Shown here: one piece after another, positions 16,715-49,922 of the stretch
How positions within the stretch are numbered: the first letter of the stretch is position 1
Layout of the letters: each line of letters opens with the position of its first letter
Assembly (NCBI GenBank): GCA_964252035.1
Contig: OZ176207.1
Reading direction: 5' to 3' (one strand)
DNA: 64,000 bases
Source: Podarcis erhardii
Lineage: Eukaryota
Program-made: the position numbers and the translations under genes
Notes under the pieces: generated by a model
Database searches by the model: none
What the model was told of the DNA's origin: nothing
What the model saw: only the letters and a program-made list of their open reading frames with translations

Positions 16715-17452
16715 CCAGCACAAATTGGAAACTGGTTCTGCTTGAACCAAGCTATGATGACCAAATTACCAGCAGGCCTATTGCAAAAAAGCAGAAGGCA
16801 TTGAAACACTAGAGGTTATAGTTAACAGTTGGGCAACCTTAGCCCAACACAAGATCATAAAAGGTCATTTTACAGTCAACAAGCTGTCCCTGGCAAATGT
16901 TTAGCAAACTAGGCTCTTATAAAACTTCCAGTGCTTGGGACTAGCTTTCACTACTCTTAATTTTAGGGGGGGGGACCTATACTGTAGTTATTTTGACTGA
17001 AATTTAAAGGATTGTAGCTTAGCTAACAATCCAAGGGTAGCAGGAAGTCTGACCCAGGTGTCAGCATTAAATAAACTAGGGGTTTCCCAAACTGTAGTCT
17101 GTGTGCCAACAGTTATCCACAAATTTAATATTGATCCTTAAGTGAATTTTTATTGTGTTTATGTGTGAATACAATCTGAATCATACCATGCAATGCAAAC
17201 TGTGATATAATAAAAGTTAGAAAAGAAGGAATTAAAAAACAATTAAAAATAGACAGCATCTAGCACAGTGTGTCATAACTGTGACAACAGGTAGAAAAAT
17301 TATTAAGTGATCCACCAAGACCAAGTGGTCTGCGGGAGCAAAAGGTTTGGGAAGCCATGAAAAAAAGAAAGTGGACACATTTCACTGGAAATCTGGGTGT
17401 GAGGAAAGCAGAGCTAGGAAAAAGAGATGCATTCACTGTGCAAAAAACTACA

Positions 17453-17676
17453 AAACAAATTCCTTCCAGTAGCACCTTAAAGACCAACTAAGTCAGTTCT
17501 TGGTATGAGCTTTCGTGTGCATGCACACTTCTTCAGATACCACTTCTTCAGATTCTTCAGTGTGCATGCACACGAAAGCTCATACCAAGAACTGACTTAG
17601 TTGGTCTTTAAGGTGCTACTGGAAGGAATTTGTTTTGTTTTGACTATGGCAGACCAACACGGCTACCTATCTGTAA
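17453..17676 (+). mobile_element. Mini PLE terminal-repeat hairpin insertion in RNF139 intron
   Basis: 80-bp inverted arms (17450-17529 / 17559-17638), 29-nt spacer, 38-nt extension ending CTGTAAC, TSD CAAAAAACTACA at 17441-52 and 17677-88. Confidence 0.9.
17503..17540 (-). ncRNA. Minimal hammerhead ribozyme motif in mini PLE
   Basis: Minus strand reads GTATCTGAAGAAGTGTGCATGCACACGAAAGCTCATAC, identical to the large element's motif. Same strand as RNF139 pre-mRNA. Confidence 0.78.
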
Positions 17677-18180
17677 CAAAAAACTACAGTAAACGTTTAG
17701 CCTATTCCAGCCAGATCAATCAACGTACATTTTCACCCTTTCGCATCCTTCAAAAGTGCCCTTCACACCCCTAACTCTAAATGGCTGAAGATGTGTTGCT
17801 GTTTCAACACTTACTTCTGGGTCAACCGGGGATTAGCAAACATCCTTTTGACAAGGACAACCACCACAACCACCAACCCGGTGCAGTTTTGATGCTCTCC
17901 AGGGGAAAGGAGGAGGTGGTTTAGGGAGGATTCACGCCCGAGAAAAACAGGTAGGCGATCGCCCTCTTCTCTCCCCAACGCCAATGAAAAGTAAGAGTGC
18001 AGGAAAGTTGCCGCACAAGGAAGCGCGGAGAAGGCACGGCGACCGTTGACCACAGAAGAAGCTTCTTCCGGGGTGGCGGAGAAAAGGAGATGTATCCCCC
18101 ACCCCCCCACACACAAAAAAATAATCCTTTCTCTCCACCTCCTGAGTAGCCTATAGGAAGGGAAGGAAGGGAAGGAAGGG

Positions 18181-18329: not shown

Positions 18330-19320
18330 GTGAGGTGTGGAAGGCCCGCCCACCCACCCCTTTCTCTCTCCCCCCCCCAGCGATAGGCATATAAAGGGGG
18401 CGCTCGTGAGGGGTGCGGGGGGGGGGGAAGGGTCTCTCACCCATCAGCCGCAGCAGCCCCCCCAGGAGGCCGGCCCACAGGGAGTCTCCGGGGAAGACCG
18501 GGGACGAGTTGAAGATGGCGTCGATGAGGAAAAGGCTGGGCACCCGCAGCGCCACCTCGGCGCCGGCCCGCAGCCACGGGCCCAGCCGCTGAGGCGGCGG
18601 TTGAAGGGGGCCCGGGGCCGCCATCCCCGAGACCCCGCCGCCTCCTGTCCGTCTCTGGGCGGGCGGCGGGGGGAAGGCCGAGAAAGGGCACGGCGATGAC
18701 GGCGGCCGCCAGTTACCGCCGGGCTCTCGCCGCCCGGGACCCCGGACGCAGGGACGTTGCCGACGCCGCCGACACCAGCGCTCGCGAGGAGGCCGCCGCC
18801 ATCATGTCCGCGATGCCTGCCTGCCTCTTCCTCCCTCCTCCTCCTCCTCATCCGCCGCCCGCCCGCCAGCCAGCCAGCCGGCGCGCGCCGCCGCCTCCTC
18901 CTGCAGCAGCTACGTAGCTGCCGCGGCCCTCTCAGAAACAACGCGATGGGCGGGGGGAGGAGGAGGAGGGGAGGGGGCGGGGCCACGGCGTCCTCCCCGT
19001 CACAATGCCCCGCCCCGCCAATAGGCAGCCGGTGCTGGCGGCGGGGCTGGTGGGTGGAGTTTAGGACTAAAAAAAAAACACCTCACCCATCACCACCACG
19101 ACCAAGGGTAACTGTCGAATGAGCGGCGCGAGCGCACCTCGTACCCGCCAATCCGGAGCCGCCAGCGCCGTCGCCGCGCACGCGCTCGGAGGTTTGTTTT
19201 TTTTTCGCCCCCCTCAGGCGAGTTGTTGGTCGCCGTCGTGGTCGTCGTGGGTCTGACCTCAGTGCCTCCTAGCTGAGGAGAGGGAGCGTGTGAGGGGATT
19301 CTTCCTCAGCAGCGTTTCGA
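18330..19320. promoter_or_regulatory. CpG island / RNF139 promoter
   Basis: Very GC- and CpG-rich; GC boxes near 18975-19015; CCAAT boxes near 19018 and 19148. Boundaries approximate. Confidence 0.85.
18441..18624 (-). CDS. RNF139: RNF139 exon 1 coding part
   Basis: ATG 18624-22, MAAPGPLQPPPQRLGPWLRAGAEVALRVPSLFLIDAIFNS...GLLRLM, then GTGAG donor at 18440. 184 nt, phase 1 joins exon 2 to give 668 aa. Confidence 0.96.
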
Positions 19321-19566
19321 ATTATTTATCTGATAAAATTTGTACACTTGATGGTAAAACAAGCCACACAGACAGACCTCAAAGGACTTTGCAAAAAGAT
19401 GAGGCAATAAAATCGTAGGGAAATTCACAGCCCTACTTTGAGGCATACTAAAGTTTAACATACTAAAGCAGTTACAGATAGGTAGCCGTGTTGGTCTGTC
19501 ATGGTCAAAACAAAATAAAAAAATTCCTTCCAGTAGCACCTTAAAGACCAACTGAGTTAGTTCTAG

Positions 19567-19604
19567 GTATGAGCTTTCGTGTGCATGCACACTTCTTCAG
19601 ATAC
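19567..19604 (-). ncRNA. Minimal hammerhead ribozyme motif (mirror copy)
   Basis: Exact reverse complement of 21770-21807. Confidence 0.8.
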
Positions 19605-21769
19605 ACTGAAACAGAAGTCACCGGACCTTTCTATATAGTGAGAAGGTGGGGAGGGGTATTACTCAGAAGGGTGGTGGGAATGGGTGATTGGCAGATAGCT
19701 GCGATGAGCCTGTTGACGACTCTTAACGACTGCAATAGGTCTAACAGGAAAAAGCAAGGGGTGAGAAGGTGAAAAATGGCTTTGTCATGTATAATGAGAT
19801 AAGAATCCAATGTCTTTATTCAAACCAGGTCTCTCCATAGTTTTAAGTTTGGTGATAAGTTGCAATTCAGCAGCTTCTCTTTCCAGTCTATTTCTGAAAT
19901 TCCTTTGTAATAGAACAGCTACTTTGAGATCTTGTATAGAATGTCCTGGGAGATTGAAGTGTTCTCCTACTGGTTTTTCTGTCTTGTGGTTCCTGATGTC
20001 GGATTTATGTCCATTTATTCTTTGGCGTAAGGTCTGGCCTGTTTGTCCAATATAGAGAGCTGAAGGACACTGTTGGCATTTTATGGCATACACAATGTTA
20101 GACGATGAGCAATTAAATAGTCCCGAGATGGTATGTGTGATGTTGTTGGGGCCAGTAATGGTGTTGTCCGGGTGTATGTGGCAGCAAAGTTGGCATCTGG
20201 GTTTATTGCAGGCTCTGGTGCCAGTGTCCGTGTTAAGTCTGGTTATAGTATTATTGTGGGTTAGGAGTTGTTTAAGATTGGGGGGCTGTCTGGAGGCAAT
20301 GAAAGGTCTTCCTCCCAGAGCTTGAGAAAGAGAACTGTCATTGTCCAGGAGAGGTTGTAGATCTCTGATGATGCGTTGTACTGTTTTAACTTGGGAGCTG
20401 TATGTGATGACTAGAGGTGTTCTGTTATTTTCTTTTTTGGGTCTGTCTTGCAGCAAGTTCTCTCTGGGTATCAGTCTGGCTCTGTTGATCTGTTGTCTAA
20501 CTTCATCTGCTGGGTATTTTAGTTCTAAAAAGGTTTGCTGTAGATCTCTTAGGTGAGAGTCTCTGTCTGTAGAATTGGAGCAGATGCGGCTGTAACGTAG
20601 TGCCTGGCTATATACAATGGACTGTTTGGTATGTTTGGGATGGTAGCTAGAGGCATGTAGATATGTTTGTCGGTCAGTTGGTTTACTGTAAACCAACTGA
20701 CCGACAAACATATCTACATGCCTCTAGCTACCATCCCAAACATACCAAACAGTCCATTGTATATAGCCAGGCACTACGTTACAGCCGCATCTGCTCCAAT
20801 TCTACAGACAGAGACTCTCACCTAAGAGATCTACAGCAAACCTTTTTAGAACTAAAATACCCAGCAGATGAAGTTAGACAACAGATCAACAGAGCCAGAC
20901 TGATACCCAGAGAGAACTTGCTGCAAGACAGACCCAAAAAAGAAAATAACAGAACACCTCTAGTCATCACATACAGCTCCCAAGTTAAAACAGTACAACG
21001 CATCATCAGAGATCTACAACCTCTCCTGGACAATGACAGTTCTCTTTCTCAAGCTCTGGGAGGAAGACCTTTCATTGCCTCCAGACAGCCCCCCAATCTT
21101 AAACAACTCCTAACCCACAATAATACTATAACCAGACTTAACACGGACACTGGCACCAGAGCCTGCAATAAACCCAGATGCCAACTTTGCTGCCACATAC
21201 ACCCGGACAACACCATTACTGGCCCCAACAACATCACACATACCATCTCGGGACTATTTAATTGCTCATCGTCTAACATTGTGTATGCCATAAAATGCCA
21301 ACAGTGTCCTTCAGCTCTCTATATTGGACAAACAGGCCAGACCTTACGCCAAAGAATAAATGGACATAAATCCGACATCAGGAACCACAAGACAGAAAAA
21401 CCAGTAGGAGAACACTTCAATCTCCCAGGACATTCTATACAAGATCTCAAAGTAGCTGTTCTATTACAAAGGAATTTCAGAAATAGACTGGAAAGAGAAG
21501 CTGCTGAATTGCAACTTATCACCAAACTTAAAACTATGGAGAGACCTGGTTTGAATAAAGACATTGGATTCTTATCTCATTATACATGACAAAGCCATTT
21601 TTCACCTTCTCACCCCTTGCTTTTTCCTGTTAGACCTATTGCAGTCGTTAAGAGTCGTCAACAGGCTCATCGCAGCTATCTGCCAATCACCCATTCCCAC
21701 CACCCTTCTGAGTAATACCCCTCCCCACCTTCTCACTATATAGAAAGGTCCGGTGACTTCTGTTTCAGT

Positions 21770-21807
21770 GTATCTGAAGAAGTGTGCATGCACACGAAAG
21801 CTCATAC
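21770..21807 (+). ncRNA. Minimal type I hammerhead ribozyme motif in PLE terminal repeat
   Basis: GTAT-CTGAAGA-A-GTGTGCATGCACAC-GAAA-GC-TC-ATAC: stem I GTAT/ATAC, CUGANGA core, stem II, GAAA, palindromic AGCT in place of stem III. Predicted cleavage after C21803. Confidence 0.8.
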
Positions 21808-21986
21808 CTAGAACTAACTCAGTTGGTCTTTAAGGTGCTACTGGAAGGAATTTTTTTATACTAAAGCAGGTTAAAGTTCAGCTCAACTTTAAGCTTCCTC
21901 TGAGTAGGCTTGTCTAAAACAGGACGTTTTTTAGCAGGCGCTGAAAAGAATAAAAGGCACCTACTTTTAAATACCATATTTATACG

Positions 21987-22518
21987 CAGTGCCAGATTTA
22001 CGTATAAGCTAAACAAGCTATAGCTTAGGGCCGCACTCTCTTGGAGGGCCCCCAAAAAATTTAAACGAAAAAAACCTGGGATGTACGTTTCCAAAATAGA
22101 AGATAAAAAACAAAATAAAATCTACAATTATTTCATGTTATAGCAAGTTTCTAGAGACTAGATTATGAGTCTTTGTAAATTGTGTTTCTAAAGGAACTTT
22201 TGTTATTGCCAAATGCCAATGTCTTTGCATTATTAAGTTTGTTATGAATAAAAATTCATTTTAAGTTAGAGCTTAATAATTATTTCACTATTAATATACT
22301 TCTTAATTGTATTTCAGTTCAACAATTACTTTGATAAAATACATATTTTGTTATGTACAAATAGCTTTAGATACCTATTAGGTCCTAAATTACCATTTGG
22401 CATATATTCAGCACACACAAAAAGCGACAATTTGTTGTTGACAAAGGAAAGCTGGACATATCAAGGGCCCCATTTCGTTCAGTAGCTTAGGGCCTCATCA
22501 AACCTAAATCCAGCCCTG
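21987..22518. mobile_element. hAT-type non-autonomous element
   Basis: CAGTGCCAGATTTA / TAAATCCAGCCCTG termini; 8-bp TSD TTTATACG / TTTATACC (7 of 8). Confidence 0.75.
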
Positions 22519-23308
22519 TTTATACCCCGCCTTTTTCCCTGTCAGGGACTCAAGGCAGCTTACAGATGAATATAAGAACAGCCAAAAATATAAGGTGTTT
22601 GTGGGTTTTAGAAGCACCTTGCTGGAATATTGCTGAAAAGGATGCCGCGTCTGGTGGCTGGCCTGATCCAAAAAGGGTTCTGTGATTGCTTTCATGGCAT
22701 GTAATTGCTGGCACACCCAAGTAAATAATTTTAGACATTTTAGTTTTGAAATGGAGTATACATTTTCCCTCCCCCATCAAAGAAAAACAGCCATGTTGTT
22801 TCCCTTCTCAAATCCCAAATTTAGATCCCAAACAATATGTTGTTGTTTTTCAGAATTTCACAACAAAATATATAGGAGCAAAACGGTGGGATGTGGTCCC
22901 AAAGCAGGCGAGTGTATTCAAGGCCAAATGAAGCCTGTTTAGTCAGAAGTACATTCCATTGATTCCGTGGGGCTTACTTCCAATATAAGATTACAAGATT
23001 ACAGCCTAAGGTAGCAGTCGTATACAGAAAAAGCTGGCATAAACCAAATTGGCTTAAATTAAGACAGCATTAAGTTGCACCAGATCCAAACTCCGTTCAG
23101 CCACAGAGCGACTGATGTCTGAGCCAGCCTAAGCCTATTAGAGGAAGCACAAGGCTTTAGGATAGTGTTTGAGTTACGGTATGCCACTATTTTTGCCATC
23201 TTCACTTATTCTGACTTGCAAGGTCAAGTGACTAAACTGAACAGGCTTTGGATCCATCCTAACTGCCCATTTGGTCCCATCCCCGGAAAGCCCATTTTTT
23301 GCATAGTT

Positions 23309-23771
23309 TTGTTGTTGTTTAGTCGTTTAGTCGTGTCCGACTTTTCCTGACCCCATGGACCAGAGCATGCCAGGCACTCCTGTTTTCCACTGCCTCCCAC
23401 AATTTGTTCAAACTCATGCTGGTAGCTTCGAGAACACTGTCCAACCATCTCGTCCTCTGTCATCCCCTTCTCCTTGTGCCCTCAATCTTTCCCAACATCA
23501 GGGTCTTTTCCAGGGAATCTTCTCTTCTCATGAGGTGGCCAAAGTATTGGAGCCTCAGCTTCATGATCTGCCCTTCCAGGGAGCACTCAGGGCTGATTTC
23601 CTTAAGAATGGATGGGTTTGATCTTCTTGCAGTCCATGGGACTCTCAAGAGTCTCCTCCAGCACCATAATTCAAAAGCATCAATTCTTTGGCGACCAGCC
23701 TTCTTTATGGTCCAGCTCTCACGTCCATACATCACTACCGGGAAAGCCATAGCTTTAACTATACGGACCTT
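23309..23771 (-). mobile_element. Bov-B (RTE) LINE 3' fragment
   Basis: MAFPVVMYGRESWTIKKAGRQRIDAFELWCWRRLLRVPWTARRSN; (CAA)n tail. Confidence 0.92.
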
Positions 23772-25016: not shown

Positions 25017-25368
25017 GTAAAGGTAAAAGGACCCCTGATCATTAGGTCCAGTCGTGACTGACTCTGGGGTTACGGCGTTCATCTCGCTTTATTGGCCGAG
25101 GGAGCCAGTGTACAGCTTCCGGGTCATGGGGCCAGCATGACTAAGCTGCTTCTGGCAAACTAGAGCAGCAAACGGAAACGCCGTTTACCTTCCCGCCAGA
25201 GTGGTACCTATTTATCTACTTGCACTGGCATGCTTTCGAACTGCTAGGTTGGCAGGAGCAGGGACCGAGCAACGGGAGCTCACCCCGTTGCAGGGATTTG
25301 AACCGCCAACCTTCTGATCGGCAAGTCCTAGGCTCTGCGGTTTAACCCACAACACCACCCGCGTCCCC
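25017..25368 (-). mobile_element. Sauria SINE, full length
   Basis: TSD AACATCAACGTTA at 25004-16 and 25369-81. Confidence 0.9.
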
Positions 25369-31623: not shown

Positions 31624-31977
31624 GGGATGCGGGTGGTGCTGTGGGTTAAACCACAGAGCCTAGGACTTGCCGATCAGAAGGTCGGTGGTTTGAATCCCCT
31701 TGACAGGGTGAGCTCCCGTTGCGCGGTCCCTGCTCCTGCCAACCTAGCAGTTCAAAAGCACATCAAAGTGCAAGTAGATAAATAGGTACTGCTCCAGCGG
31801 GAAGGTAAACGGCATTTCTGTGTGCTGCTCTGGTTCGCTAGAAGTGGCTTAGTCATGCTGGCCACATGACCTGGAAGCTGTACGCTGGCTCCCTCGGTCA
31901 ATAAAGCAAGATGAGCGCCACAACCCCAGAGTCGGTCACGACTGGACCTAATGGTCAGGGGTCCCTTTACCTTTACC
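31624..31977 (+). mobile_element. Sauria SINE, full length
   Basis: TSD ATCTTGAGACA at 31610-20 and 31979-89. Confidence 0.9.
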
Positions 31978-36610: not shown

Positions 36611-37270
36611 CATCACCTCCCATCACCTCCTGGCAAATAGAAGGGGAAGAAATGGAGGCAGTGAGAGATTTTACTTTCTTGGGCTCCATGATCACTGCAG
36701 ATGGTGACAGCAGCCACGAAATTAAAAGACGCCTGCTTCTTGGGAGAAAAGCAATGACAAACCTAGACAGCATCTTGAAAAGTAGAGACATCACCTTGCC
36801 AACAAAGGTCCGTATAGTAAAAGCTATGGTTTTCCCAGTAGTGATGTATGGAAGTGAGAGCTGGACCATAGAGAAGGCTGATCATTGAAGAATTGATGCT
36901 TTTGAATTATGGTGCTGGAGGAGACTCTTGAGAGTCCCGTGGACTGCAAGAAGATCAAACCTATCCATTTTTAAGGAAATCAGCCCTGAGTGCTCACTAG
37001 AAGGACAGATCATGAAGCTGAGGCTCCAGTACTTTGGCTGCCTCATGAGAATAGAGGACTACCTGGAAAAGACCCTGATGTTGGGAAAGATGGAGGGCAC
37101 AAGGAGAAGGGGACGACAGAGGACAAGATGGTTGGACAGTGTTCTCGAAGCTACCAGCATGAGTTTGGCCAAACTGCGGGAGGCAGTGGAAGACAGAAGT
37201 GCCTGGCATGCTCTGGTCCTGGGGGTCATGAAGAGTCGAACATCACTAAACGACTAAACAACAACAAAAC
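36611..37270 (+). mobile_element. Bov-B (RTE) LINE 3' fragment
   Basis: MEAVRDFTFLGSMITADGDSSHEIKRRLLLGRKAM...; (CAA)n tail; possible TSD CCCTTTTA at 36603-10 and 37274-81. Confidence 0.92.
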
Positions 37271-42773: not shown

Positions 42774-43121
42774 GAGTGACGCGGGTGGCGCTGTGGGTTA
42801 AACCACAGAGCCTAGGACTTGCCAATCAGAAGGTCGGCGGTTCGAATCCCTGCGATGGGGTGAGCTCCCGTTGCGCAGTCCCAGCTCCTGCCAACCTAGC
42901 AGTTTGAAAGCTCGTCAGAGTGCAAGTAGATAAATAGGTACCGCTCCGGTGGGAAGGTAAATGGCATTTCCGTGCTCCGCTCTGGTTCGCTTGAAGCAGC
43001 TTAGTTATGCTAGCAACATGACCCAGCAGCTGTACGCCAGCTCCCTCAGCCAATAAAGCGAGATGAGCGCCGTAACCCCAGAGTCGGTCACAACTGAACC
43101 TAATGGTCAGGGGTCCCTTTA
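42774..43121 (+). mobile_element. Sauria SINE, full length
   Basis: TSD CCTAACCTTTATAA at 42760-73 and 43122-35. Confidence 0.9.
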
Positions 43122-43202
43122 CCTAACCTTTATAAAGGCCAAAGTCATTTGAGGCAACACTTACTTTCCCTGGAATCTTTGTCCCTTAATCCTAGAGGGG
43201 TT

Positions 43203-43800
43203 TGAAATATACTCGGAGTCGAGAGTGGATTTCATGCTCTTTATTCAGATCATAGTGGTGAGGAGAAATGGAAGTTCCCCCACAGTCAAAACAAAACAAA
43301 TTCCTTCCAGTAGCACCTTAAAGACCAACTAAGTCAGTTCTTGGTATGAGCTTCCGTGTGCATGCACTTCTTCTTCAGATACACTTCTTCAGATACAGTG
43401 TGCATGCACACGAAAGCTCATACCAAGAACTGACTTAGTTGGTCTTTAAGGTGCTACTGGAAGGAATTTGTTTTGTTTTGACTATGGCAGACCAACACGG
43501 CTACCTATCTGTAACTTCCCCCACAGTATCTGCTTTATATACATTATTTACACAATGGGCTGCACATGATTGGCTAATTCCGGGATTCTTTTGTAGGCCA
43601 ATCAGGTTGTGGATTCACTTCCTCCTGGAGTTGGATTGGGTGGCTCCTGCGGACCAATCATGCTGCTGCATTGTTCTAGGACTGCTGCATTCTGAATCCT
43701 ATTGTTCTAGGACCAATCAGACTGCTGCATTTTGGATCCTATTGTTCTAGGACCAATCAGACTGCTGCATTTTGGATCCTATTCAACTCAGTACATAACA
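43203..43800 (-). mobile_element. Solo LTR with CCAAT-rich 40-bp repeats
   Basis: Minus strand starts TGTTATGTAC and ends ...TATATTTCA, with AATAAA near its 3' end. Exact 40-mer duplication at 43701-40 / 43741-80. No clean TSD found. Confidence 0.65.
43287..43515 (+). mobile_element. Mini PLE terminal-repeat hairpin insertion, nested in a solo LTR
   Basis: Inverted arms about 43284-43367 / 43400-43483, 32-nt extension ending CTGTAAC, TSD TTCCCCCACAGT at 43275-86 and 43516-27. Left-arm hammerhead is degenerate (GAAA to GGAA). Confidence 0.9.
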
Positions 43801-48556: not shown

Positions 48557-49922
48557 GGGATGCGGGTGGTGCTGTGGGTTAAACCACAGAGCCTAGGATT
48601 TGCCGATCAGAAGGTCGGTGGTTCGAATCCCCGCAACAGGGTGAGCTCCCGTTGCTCCATCCCTGCTCCTGCCAACCTAGCAGTTCAAAAGCACATCAAA
48701 GTGCGACCAAGGTACTTTCGAGAATGTATAACTTGCTGCTTAAATGGAATACTCAGGATGAGACAGTCAAATCAGCCATGATAAAATGGGCTCAGGATAT
48801 TGGGTATAACATTATGTTTGAAGACTGGGAAAGGTTATGGACCACTGGAATGAGATTTACGGCATGTAATGCCTTGAAAGAGAATATTATGAAAATGATA
48901 TATAGGTGGTACATGACCCCAGTCAAACTTGCAAAAATTTACCATCGATCCGATAATAAATGTTGGAAATGTAAGGAGGCTGAAGGGACATTTTTTCACC
49001 TTTGGTGGACTTGTCCAAAAGTGAAGGCCTTCTGGGAAATGATCTATAATGAACTAAAAAAGGTGTTTAGGTACACCTTTCCCAAGAAACCAGAGGCCTT
49101 CCTCCTGGGCATTGTGGACCAAAGGGTGATAAAGAAGGATAAGACATTTTTTATGTATGCATCTACAGCAGCAAGAATACTTATAGCAAAATATTGGAAG
49201 ACACAAGATCTTCCCACGCTGGAAGAGTGGCAGACGCAGTTGATGGACTATATGGAATTGGCCGAAATGACTGGCAGAATCCGGGATTTGGATGAAGAGA
49301 CAATGGAAGAAGATTGGAAAAAATTTAAGGACTATTTGCAAAAACAATACAAGCTATATGAATGTTAAGAATCTGCATGTTTTGGAACCTAGCTCCTGCA
49401 ACTAGATCGAGAAAATGGGAAGATAAGTTACACTTAAGAAAAAGTTGAAATTTAAGGTTATTATATTTTTTATTTTAAGGCATAAATATTAGATAGAAGG
49501 CACCTTAAAATTAGAAGTAAAATATTTTGAAAGGTATAGATAAGATACGAAACAAGGTAATAATTTGCTGATATGTTTTATTGTAAAGAATGCAGGGTGA
49601 GGGAGGTGTGGGGAAGTCCAGCTAACAATCTAAAAATGTATTTTGAAAGTTGGAGTATTATTTATTTTTCTTCTTTTTTCTTCTGTAAACTGAAAATGCA
49701 ATAAAAACGTGTGTTTTTTTAAAAAAAGCACATCAAAGTGCAAGTAGATAAATAGGTACCGCTCCAGCGGGAAGGTAAACAGCGTTTCTGTGCGCTGCTC
49801 TGATTCACCAGAAGCGGCTTAGTCATGCTGGCTCCCTCGGCCAATAAAACGAGATGAGCGCCACAACCCCAGAGTCGGTCATGACTGGACCTAACGGTCA
49901 GGGGTCCCTTTACCTTTACCTT
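48557..49922 (+). mobile_element. Sauria SINE split by an L1 insertion
   Basis: 5' half 48557-48704 and 3' half 49742-49922 are contiguous in the SINE consensus. Confidence 0.88.
48705..49723 (+). mobile_element. 5'-truncated L1-type LINE (ORF2 C-terminal zinc knuckle plus 3' UTR)
   Basis: CWKCKEAEGTFFHLWWTC motif, stop at 49368, AATAAA at 49700, A-run, 18-bp TSD AAAAGCACATCAAAGTGC at 48687-704 and 49724-41. Confidence 0.9.

What the first reader, a model, noticed from the sequence alone, without database searches (positions are those of the whole stretch)
19460..21869. 2,345-bp perfect palindrome with a 1-nt spacer, made of a GIY-YIG Penelope-like element
Seen: 1,172-bp arms mirrored about T20687. 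All ORF-track translations and the spot-checked DNA are identical between arms, giving the same RT-thumb/GIY-YIG peptide on both strands. It has a 12-bp TSD and a 43-nt unpaired extension. Established: long spacerless palindromes extrude cruciforms, are fragile and tend to be lost or gain central deletions. Inference: a very young, possibly polymorphic insertion from a still-active Neptune-type family (C-x4-C-x2-C linker), retaining the primary integration product.
Basis: partly seen in the sequence, partly recalled or inferred. Interest (0 to 1): 0.8.

Follow-up and report, generated by a model that had tools for sequence, protein, structure and literature searches.

The report
Young palindromic Penelope-like retroelement insertion
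A lizard genome carries a very recent insertion of a Penelope-like jumping gene that was laid down as two mirror-image halves, forming a perfect 2.3-kb DNA palindrome; this layout is a known signature of the element class, so it is an unusually clean example and not a new kind of thing.

Summary
Arms 19515-20686 and 20688-21859 are 1,172 nt each and 100% complementary about T20687. There is a 12-bp target-site duplication (ATACTAAAGCAG) and a 43-nt extension on the left arm only. Each arm encodes the last 300 codons (RT thumb, CX4CX2C linker, GIY-YIG endonuclease) of a Penelope-like element (PLE). Full-length relatives carry a reverse transcriptase upstream of this module. Contigs from two other organisms join 19459 directly to 21858 with one copy of the 12-mer, which is an exact empty site. 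The insertion is therefore real and lineage-specific, not a fold-back assembly artefact. One contig from the probable source species also looks like the empty allele, so polymorphism is likely but unproven. Head-to-head 5'-truncated copies with a 30-40-bp one-sided tail are a published PLE hallmark. Two short insertions in this window (17453-17676, 43287-43514) have the same layout. New details: the central T belongs to a TACTGTA heptamer already present in the parent; the tail-less arm joins the target through 2-3 nt of microhomology in all three insertions; and each arm carries a minimal hammerhead motif. The best mechanism is target-primed reverse transcription followed by cDNA turn-around. 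Verdict: new member of a known kind, of moderate interest.

The parts
19460..19471 (.). Left copy of the target-site duplication, ATACTAAAGCAG
   Evidence: Contigs of two other organisms hold a single copy of this 12-mer at the uninterrupted site (records 18 and 24).
19472..19514 (-). 43-nt 'tail': the extreme 3' end of the element (...GACCAACACGGCTACCTATCTGTAA on the minus strand), present on this arm only
   Evidence: The same terminal sequence ends the long arm of copies A and B. It corresponds to the published 30-40-bp PLE tail (31 bp).
19515..20686 (-). Left arm: 5'-truncated PLE copy in reverse orientation (RT thumb, linker, GIY-YIG EN, 3' UTR)
20684..20690 (.). Turn-around point: heptamer TACTGTA, already present in the parental element, centred on T20687
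   Evidence: Loose ends in X4 and X7 and record 9 in X15 show that longer copies match from 20684 and continue upstream as ...GACACCACCTTA, in frame with the conserved LY-KPTD motif of relatives.
20688..21859 (+). Right arm: the same 5'-truncated PLE copy in forward orientation, lacking the last 43 nt
21858..21869 (.). Right copy of the target-site duplication. Its first 2 nt (AT) are shared with the element's continuation, which is microhomology.
20663..21589 (+). 308-aa ORF: 8 codons borrowed from the opposite arm (including the ATG), then 300 codons of PLE thumb, CX4CX2C linker and GIY-YIG. Its mirror ORF lies at 19785-20711 on the minus strand.
21770..21807 (+). Minimal hammerhead ribozyme motif (GUAU-CUGAAGA-A-GUGUGCAUGCACAC-GAAA-GC-UC|AUAC). 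Its mirror lies at 19567-19604 on the minus strand.
   Evidence: The descriptor search gives 3 matches, all in PLE arms, against 0.02 expected. The same motif occurs in the 3' region of the distant PLE L001 with a compensatory pair change. The minimum-free-energy fold is hammerhead-shaped, but its z-score of -0.95 is not significant. Rfam models do not detect it. Its features match those published for PLE min-HHRs.
21737..21771 (+). TATA-like box (TATATAG, 21737-21743) and TCAGT (A at 21767) 30 nt downstream: the inferred internal promoter and transcript start. Its mirror lies at 19603-19637 on the minus strand.
   Evidence: Sequence. Head-to-head joints in many other copies start at 21766-21771 (table 5). 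This is an inference and was not tested. Earlier scan notes say the same.
17441..17688 (+). Copy A: a short insertion of the same family with the same layout. TSD CAAAAAACTACA at 17441-17452 and 17677-17688; tail-less inverted arm from 17453; forward arm with a full tail ending at 17676.
43275..43527 (+). Copy B: a second short insertion with the same layout. TSD TTCCCCCACAGT at 43275-43286 and 43516-43527; inverted arm from 43287 lacking 34 nt; forward arm with a full tail ending at 43514.

Best explanation
This is one recent retrotransposition event of an abundant, currently active Penelope-like element (PLE) of a lizard. The element has a C-terminal GIY-YIG endonuclease (EN) with a Neptune-type linker. 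The event left its primary product in the genome: two head-to-head copies of the last 1.2 kb of the element.

Proposed steps. Step 1 follows the published model of target-primed reverse transcription for this class. Steps 2-5 are inferred from the junction anatomy seen here.
1. The EN makes staggered nicks 10-12 bp apart.
2. One 3'-OH primes reverse transcription exactly at the RNA 3' end, which gives the arm with the tail.
3. After about 1.2 kb the enzyme leaves the RNA at a short palindrome (TACTGTA). The cDNA 3' end pairs with itself, or with a second cDNA, and is extended back along the cDNA. This creates the mirror arm without adding any nucleotides.
4. Back-copying stops 34-43 nt short of the start.
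5. That end is joined to the other side of the target break through 2-3 nt of microhomology.

The result is a perfect palindrome with a one-sided tail and a target-site duplication. The copy lacks the RT core and its own start codon, so it cannot move by itself.
For: Shown:
- The arms are perfect and the tail and TSD are as described.
- Two other organisms have an exact empty site joining 19459 to 21858, with flanks about 2% diverged (records 18 and 24).
- The copy's diagnostic letters are frequent in X1 and nearly absent in X4 and X7, and family depth exceeds single-copy depth by about three to four orders of magnitude and rises towards the 3' end.
- The protein module is homologous to the C-terminus of 700-880-aa proteins that carry RVT_1. 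The CX4CX2C motif and the GIY-YIG residues are invariant among them.
- Two further insertions in the window share the layout, with 12-bp TSDs and 41- and 34-nt tails.
- The parental heptamer palindrome sits at the centre. The chance of three matching bases beyond the centre is 1/64.
- Microhomology of 2, 3 and 3 nt is present at all three tail-less junctions.

From the literature:
- An inverted 5'-truncated copy, a one-sided 30-40-bp tail, and assembly difficulty are described for PLEs (PMC8557442).
- Palindromes at inverted junctions have been read as self-priming, and microhomology 5' junctions are reported (PMC3846280).
Against: No read or contig crossing the centre or either element-flank junction was visible in the rows returned. 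The structure of this particular copy therefore rests on the assembly plus the TSD and empty-site logic. Self-priming and mutual priming of two cDNAs cannot be told apart from sequence. Why back-copying stops 34-43 nt short is unexplained; the literature instead proposes EN-mediated resolution of an intermediate. The commonest short-copy joint (19604|21770) shows no microhomology, so the turn-around does not always need a palindrome.
Confidence: 0.8

Rival explanations
1. The palindrome is older, and its arms are kept identical by gene conversion between them, as in sex-chromosome and other large palindromes.
For: Arm-to-arm conversion is well established for large palindromes (general knowledge). 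An earlier scan note describes a homogenised gene palindrome in this genome (s1-238292).
Against: The site is empty in two organisms only about 2% diverged. The copy carries letters of a subfamily found almost only in the probable source species. The ORF, TSD and tail are all pristine. Conversion is not needed to explain 0/1,172 differences in so young an insertion.
Confidence: 0.07
2. It is an assembly or sequencing artefact: a fold-back chimeric long read, or a mis-join, turned a simple 5'-truncated insertion (or no insertion at all) into a palindrome.
For: Inverted PLE structures are known to trouble assemblies. No centre-spanning contig was seen. One X1 contig appears to carry the empty allele (records 2 and 5).
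Against: A fold-back artefact would mirror the flank as well. Here both outer ends are element 3' ends that abut different unique flanks. The duplicated 12-mer is single in the empty site of two other organisms. Assemblers do not create target-site duplications. Copies A and B show the same layout, with a diverged, non-palindromic centre in both and about three arm differences in B, so they cannot be fold-back artefacts.
Confidence: 0.06
3. A pre-existing palindromic master element is transcribed through both arms and retrotransposed as one unit, so the mirror structure was inherited and not made at integration.
For: Short copies A and B share an odd duplicated centre and are 96.5% identical to each other. 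Identical short joints recur in many contigs of several organisms (table 5). For the short class, copying as a unit is therefore possible.
Against: For the 2.3-kb copy the template would be a perfect 1.17-kb RNA hairpin, which is a poor RT template and a Dicer substrate. The recurrent short joints are equally well explained by run-off at a fixed transcript start. No second locus with the 20686|20688 centre was seen.
Confidence: 0.05

Closest known systems
Canonical EN+ Penelope-like element insertions (Penelope/Poseidon, Neptune, Nematis, Naiad) as described by Arkhipova and colleagues (PMC8557442, PMC3846280)
   Same: The following are shared: an RT plus a C-terminal GIY-YIG EN; frequent 5' truncation; an inverted 5'-truncated copy joined head-to-head; a 30-40-bp tail at one end only; short TSDs; palindromes at the inverted junction; and a minimal hammerhead in the terminal repeat.
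   Different: There is no full-length unit or direct pseudo-LTR tandem here. Both arms stop at the same base, so the whole insertion is one perfect 2,345-bp palindrome. The TSD is 12 bp, against 8-10 bp in the rotifer examples. The tail is 43 nt, slightly above the quoted range.
L1/LINE twin priming and microhomology-mediated 5' junctions (my own knowledge; the LINE microhomology junction is also cited in PMC3846280)
   Same: The insertion is a 5'-truncated, target-primed reverse transcription product with a TSD. Part of it is inverted, and the end made last is joined to the target by microhomology.
   Different: Twin priming inverts a different, non-overlapping segment of the element. Here the two arms are copies of the same segment, which points to copying of cDNA and not to two primings on one RNA. 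The endonuclease type also differs.
Hairpin (snap-back) self-primed second-strand cDNA synthesis by reverse transcriptases in vitro (my own knowledge)
   Same: The cDNA 3' end folds back on a few complementary bases and is extended along itself, giving a perfect inverted duplicate joined at the RNA-5'-proximal end.
   Different: That is an in vitro property of retroviral RTs. It has not been shown for a PLE RT, and the chromosomal product needs further steps (opening of the hairpin and joining to the target).
Mu killer of maize and other inverted-duplicate TE loci that produce hairpin RNA (my own knowledge)
   Same: An inverted duplication of part of an active element could give a long perfect double-stranded RNA against that element if transcribed.
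   Different: There is no evidence of transcription or small RNAs here. The origin is retrotransposition and not DNA rearrangement.

Membership tests
Penelope-like elements (EN+) | C-terminal GIY-YIG endonuclease with its conserved Cys/His motif | tested here: met
   Pfam GIY-YIG, E = 1.1e-5, above the curated cutoff. GIY/YIG tyrosines, R221, E274, N290, C204/C207 and His residues are invariant in the alignment with relatives.
Penelope-like elements (EN+) | PLE-type reverse transcriptase N-terminal to the EN in one ORF | tested here: inconclusive
   This copy is 5'-truncated and holds only the thumb onward. Full-length relatives (P0014, P0016, P0023, P0029, P0043, P0051; 34-51% identity) carry RVT_1 upstream of the homologous module.
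Penelope-like elements (EN+) | Insertion architecture: 5' truncation, adjacent inverted copy, one-sided 30-40-bp tail, TSD | tested here: met
   Seen in all three insertions in the window.
Penelope-like elements (EN+) | Minimal hammerhead ribozyme motif in the terminal repeat | tested here: met
   The descriptor is met at 21774-21803 and its mirror: 3 matches against 0.02 expected. It is also met in distant PLE L001, with a compensatory helix II change. Rfam models are negative. Cleavage activity cannot be tested here.
Neptune clade of PLEs | [quoted passage not shown] | tested here: met
   C160-x4-C165-x2-C168 is invariant across the 8 aligned sequences. It is shared with Nematis and Naiad, so it does not decide the clade alone.
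Neptune clade of PLEs | Placement within Neptune in an RT-based phylogeny | not tested
   The RT core is absent from this copy, and no named reference sequences were available.
Long perfect DNA palindrome (cruciform-prone) | Arms of several hundred bp or more, identical, with a spacer of a few nt or less | tested here: met
   The arms are 1,172 nt, 100% complementary, with a 1-nt centre. Instability in vivo was not tested.

The most novel reading that the evidence does not exclude
The palindrome lies about 0.15 kb from a CpG-island-like block and about 0.8 kb from a candidate first exon. If read-through transcripts cross it, they would fold into a perfect 1.17-kb double-stranded RNA matching the thumb/EN region of a currently active PLE family. 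A polymorphic insertion of this kind could then act as a spontaneous hairpin-RNA silencer of its own family, like Mu killer, and also as a fragile site segregating in the population. Nothing here tests transcription or small RNAs.
Probability: 0.08. Interest if true: 0.65.

Novelty: new member of a known kind. Interest (0 to 1): 0.33.

Why it matters
How PLEs integrate, and why they leave inverted copies and a one-sided tail, is still unresolved; the literature calls for mechanistic work (PMC8557442). A pristine product gives base-level junction data:
- it has zero arm divergence;
- its pre-insertion site is preserved in related organisms;
- its parental sequence is known across the turn-around point.

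These data show no untemplated nucleotides at the centre, a pre-existing heptamer palindrome there, and microhomology at the tail-less end. They favour cDNA turn-around followed by end-joining. Kb-scale perfect palindromes are also expected to be unstable, so such insertions may be a recurring source of structural variation and assembly error in lizard genomes. This instance is one of many similar ones noted in this genome, so its value is as a clean data point and not as a discovery.

Tried and rejected
- **Rfam search of the locus.** The only hits are sub-threshold microRNA models centred on the palindrome, symmetric on both strands. I rejected them as generic matches to a perfect hairpin.
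- **Rfam search of the 3' region at E up to 10.** No hammerhead family matched. The motif was found only with a descriptor based on the published min-HHR features.
- **Thermodynamic support for the hammerhead fold.** The z-score of -0.95 is not significant, so I did not use it as evidence.
- **Exact-sequence look-ups of the two centre-crossing 308-aa ORFs in public assemblies.** The aim was independent evidence for the centre junction. Neither is on record, which is uninformative.
- **Look-ups of the close relatives P0005 and P0001 to fetch a longer parental copy.** Neither is on record. Only a distant relative from a marine metagenome (L001, 51% identity) could be fetched. Its AT-rich upstream region gave no clear TATA/start layout to compare.
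- **tblastn and blastn of the element against the window.** No other fragments turned up beyond copies A and B.
- **The apparent 88% arm identity of copies A and B in the self-BLAST.** This was an alignment effect of their rearranged centres. In A the arms are identical over the shared part, and in B they differ at about three positions.
- **Copy-number estimates from summed contig depth.** I give these only as orders of magnitude, because the tool warns that depth is not copy number.

Full report
**Observation**

The repeat finder and an independent script agree. Positions 19515-20686 and 20688-21859 are reverse complements of each other over 1,172 nt without a single mismatch, with T20687 between them. 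Symmetry ends abruptly at offset 1,173. ATACTAAAGCAG occurs at 19460-19471 and again at 21858-21869. The 43 nt at 19472-19514 have no counterpart on the right. Both strands carry a 308-aa ORF that differs only at the codon spanning the centre.

**What the arms are**

The ORF contains a GIY-YIG domain above Pfam's cutoff. An exhaustive HMMER search found more than 10,000 relatives. In the long ones (700-880 aa) the query always aligns to the C-terminal 300 or so residues. Those proteins carry an RVT_1 reverse transcriptase domain upstream. In an alignment with seven relatives, the KPT motif of the thumb, the C-x4-C-x2-C linker, the GIY and YIG tyrosines, and the Arg, Glu and Asn of the nuclease core are all invariant. 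This is the domain order and linker motif published for EN+ Penelope-like elements of the Neptune/Nematis type (PMC8557442). The language-model atlas points to the same chordate HTH_animal/GIY-YIG clusters. The copy lacks the RT core, so clade assignment by RT phylogeny could not be done.

**Is it real, and how old?**

All available runs were Logan contigs with coded organisms.

- *Empty site in two other organisms.* In organisms B and C, single contigs run from the left flank to 19456/19459 and continue at 21858 into the right flank (records 18 and 24). That is the uninterrupted site with one copy of the 12-mer. Those flanks differ from the window by about 2% (15 of 730 and 14 of 715 aligned bases).
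- *Not a fold-back artefact.* A fold-back artefact cannot produce two element 3' ends abutting two different unique flanks with a duplicated 12-mer that is single in the empty site.
- *Age bound.* With 0/1,172 differences, the 95% upper bound on arm divergence is 0.26%. This is roughly an eighth of the divergence from B and C, if conversion between the arms is ignored.
- *A lineage-specific subfamily.* The copy's diagnostic letters (for example 19623 G, 19628 T, 20082 T, 21292 A) account for about a third to a half of family depth in X1, the probable source species, whose flanks show no differences. They account for essentially none in B and C (table 3). The subfamily therefore expanded after those lineages separated.
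- *Abundance.* Family depth exceeds single-copy depth by about three to four orders of magnitude and rises towards the 3' end, as expected from 5' truncation. The tool warns that depth is not copy number.

**Polymorphism**

In X1, a 253-nt contig aligns perfectly to 19247-19459 and stops at exactly the empty-site breakpoint, with 40 nt unlisted. Another contig starts at 21868. If the 40 nt are 21858-21897, the two contigs overlap by 30 nt, which is k-1 for these graphs (records 2 and 5). I read this as an empty allele in that sample, with about 75% confidence. This would make the insertion heterozygous or polymorphic. The rows returned do not show the 40 letters, and no contig crossing the centre or a filled junction was listed, so this remains an inference.

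**Comparison with what is known**

The layout is not unusual for the class.
- Craig et al. describe PLE insertions as highly 5'-truncated, often with an inverted 5'-truncated copy adjacent, and with a 30-40-bp tail often present at only one end. They note that such structures trouble assemblies.
- Arkhipova et al. describe a 31-bp tail, 8-10-bp TSDs, palindromes at inverted junctions read as self-priming, and microhomology 5' junctions.
- The same window holds two short insertions of the family with the same plan. Copy A (17453-17676) has a 12-bp TSD and a tail of 41 nt. Copy B (43287-43514) has a 12-bp TSD and a tail of 34 nt.
- Earlier notes of this scan, which are unchecked leads, list several other kb-scale PLE palindromes and many short ones in this lizard genome.

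**New detail from the junctions**

1. *The centre.* Longer copies in other runs match the window from 20684 and continue upstream as ...GACACCACCTTA. This keeps the frame and the conserved LY-KPTD motif. The parent therefore already reads TACTGTA at 20684-20690. The arms overlap by this heptamer, and the "spacer" T is templated. The chance of three matching bases beyond a random turn-around point is 1/64.
2. *The tail-less end.* In all three insertions, the tail-less arm meets the target at bases shared by the target and the element's continuation: AT, ACA and AGT. The naive joint probability is about 1.5e-5. The tailed end always stops at ...CTATCTGTAA.
3. *The hammerhead.* A descriptor for the published min-HHR matches three times in the window, always inside PLE arms, against 0.02 expected. 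It consists of CUGANGA, one extra base, a G...C-closed helix II, GAAA, a palindromic dinucleotide and UH. It also matches the 3' region of a PLE only 51% identical in protein, with an A-U to G-C exchange in helix II. Rfam models miss it, and the fold energy is not significant.
4. *A probable transcript start.* A TATATAG box lies 30 nt upstream of a TCAGT at 21765-21769. Head-to-head joints in many other copies from four organisms begin at 21766-21771, most often the exact mirror pair 19604|21770 (table 5). This fits run-off at a fixed transcript 5' end just in front of the hammerhead. Earlier scan notes reached the same idea. It is an inference.

**Mechanism**

The best-supported account has five steps.
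1. The EN makes staggered nicks.
2. Reverse transcription is primed at the precise RNA 3' end.
3. The enzyme leaves the RNA at an internal mini-palindrome, or at the RNA 5' end in the short copies.
4. The cDNA is extended back along cDNA, either its own strand or a second one.
5. Extension ends 34-43 nt short of the start, and that end is joined to the other target end by microhomology.

Self-priming and mutual priming of two cDNAs cannot be separated by sequence. The cause of the constant tail length (a protein footprint or an EN cut) is open.

Rivals are ranked lower, for the reasons given in their entries:
- homogenisation of the arms by gene conversion;
- an assembly artefact;
- copying of a palindromic master as a unit.

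**Verdict**

This is a real, very young and probably polymorphic PLE insertion that preserves the primary mirror-image product. It is a clean new member of a known kind, in a genome where the kind is common.

Noticed in passing
window:18400-19300 and 18440-18624 (minus strand): A CpG-island-like GC-rich block (GC 0.58 in the 18-20 kb bin) with CCAAT motifs and GGA/GCC repeats. On the minus strand it holds a candidate first coding exon (MAAPGPLQPPPQRLGPW...RLMG, followed by a GT donor). The PLE palindrome sits about 0.15 kb from the block's edge. The gene was not identified.
   Followed up: partly
window:44000-46000: A second strongly GC-rich block (GC 0.64), about 0.5-2.5 kb to the right of PLE copy B. 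It was not examined.
   Followed up: no
window:17453-17676 and 43287-43514: The two short PLE hairpin insertions are 96.5% identical to each other. They share an odd centre in which about 13 nt (ACTTCTTCAGAT) are repeated before the strand switch. Either they descend from a hairpin master copied as a unit, or the enzyme stutters reproducibly at the RNA 5' end.
   Followed up: partly
window:20631-20743: Rfam microRNA models (mir-4536, mir-2237, mir-190 and others) score 30-47 bits on both strands at the palindrome centre, all below their gathering scores. This is a generic perfect-hairpin effect and not a microRNA gene.
   Followed up: yes
window:21987-22500: A very high-copy repeat begins at 21987, about 117 bp to the right of the insertion. 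Hundreds of contigs from all the runs diverge there.
   Followed up: no
window:12157-12466, 25017-25367, 31624-31976, 42778-43124, 48557-48704, 49724-49921: A roughly 350-bp interspersed repeat family (SINE-like) with copies 75-95% identical. A separate 466-bp inverted pair lies at 23306-23771 and 36805-37270 (92% identical).
   Followed up: no
window:18190-18300: A tRNA-like segment (…GGCTCGAACCCGCGACC…) inside the region upstream of the CpG block. It is probably a SINE fragment.
   Followed up: no
L001:2557-2588: A marine-metagenome PLE (707-aa RT-EN ORF, 51% identical in the EN module) carries the same minimal hammerhead descriptor about 400 nt after its stop codon, at the very end of the contig.
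   Followed up: partly
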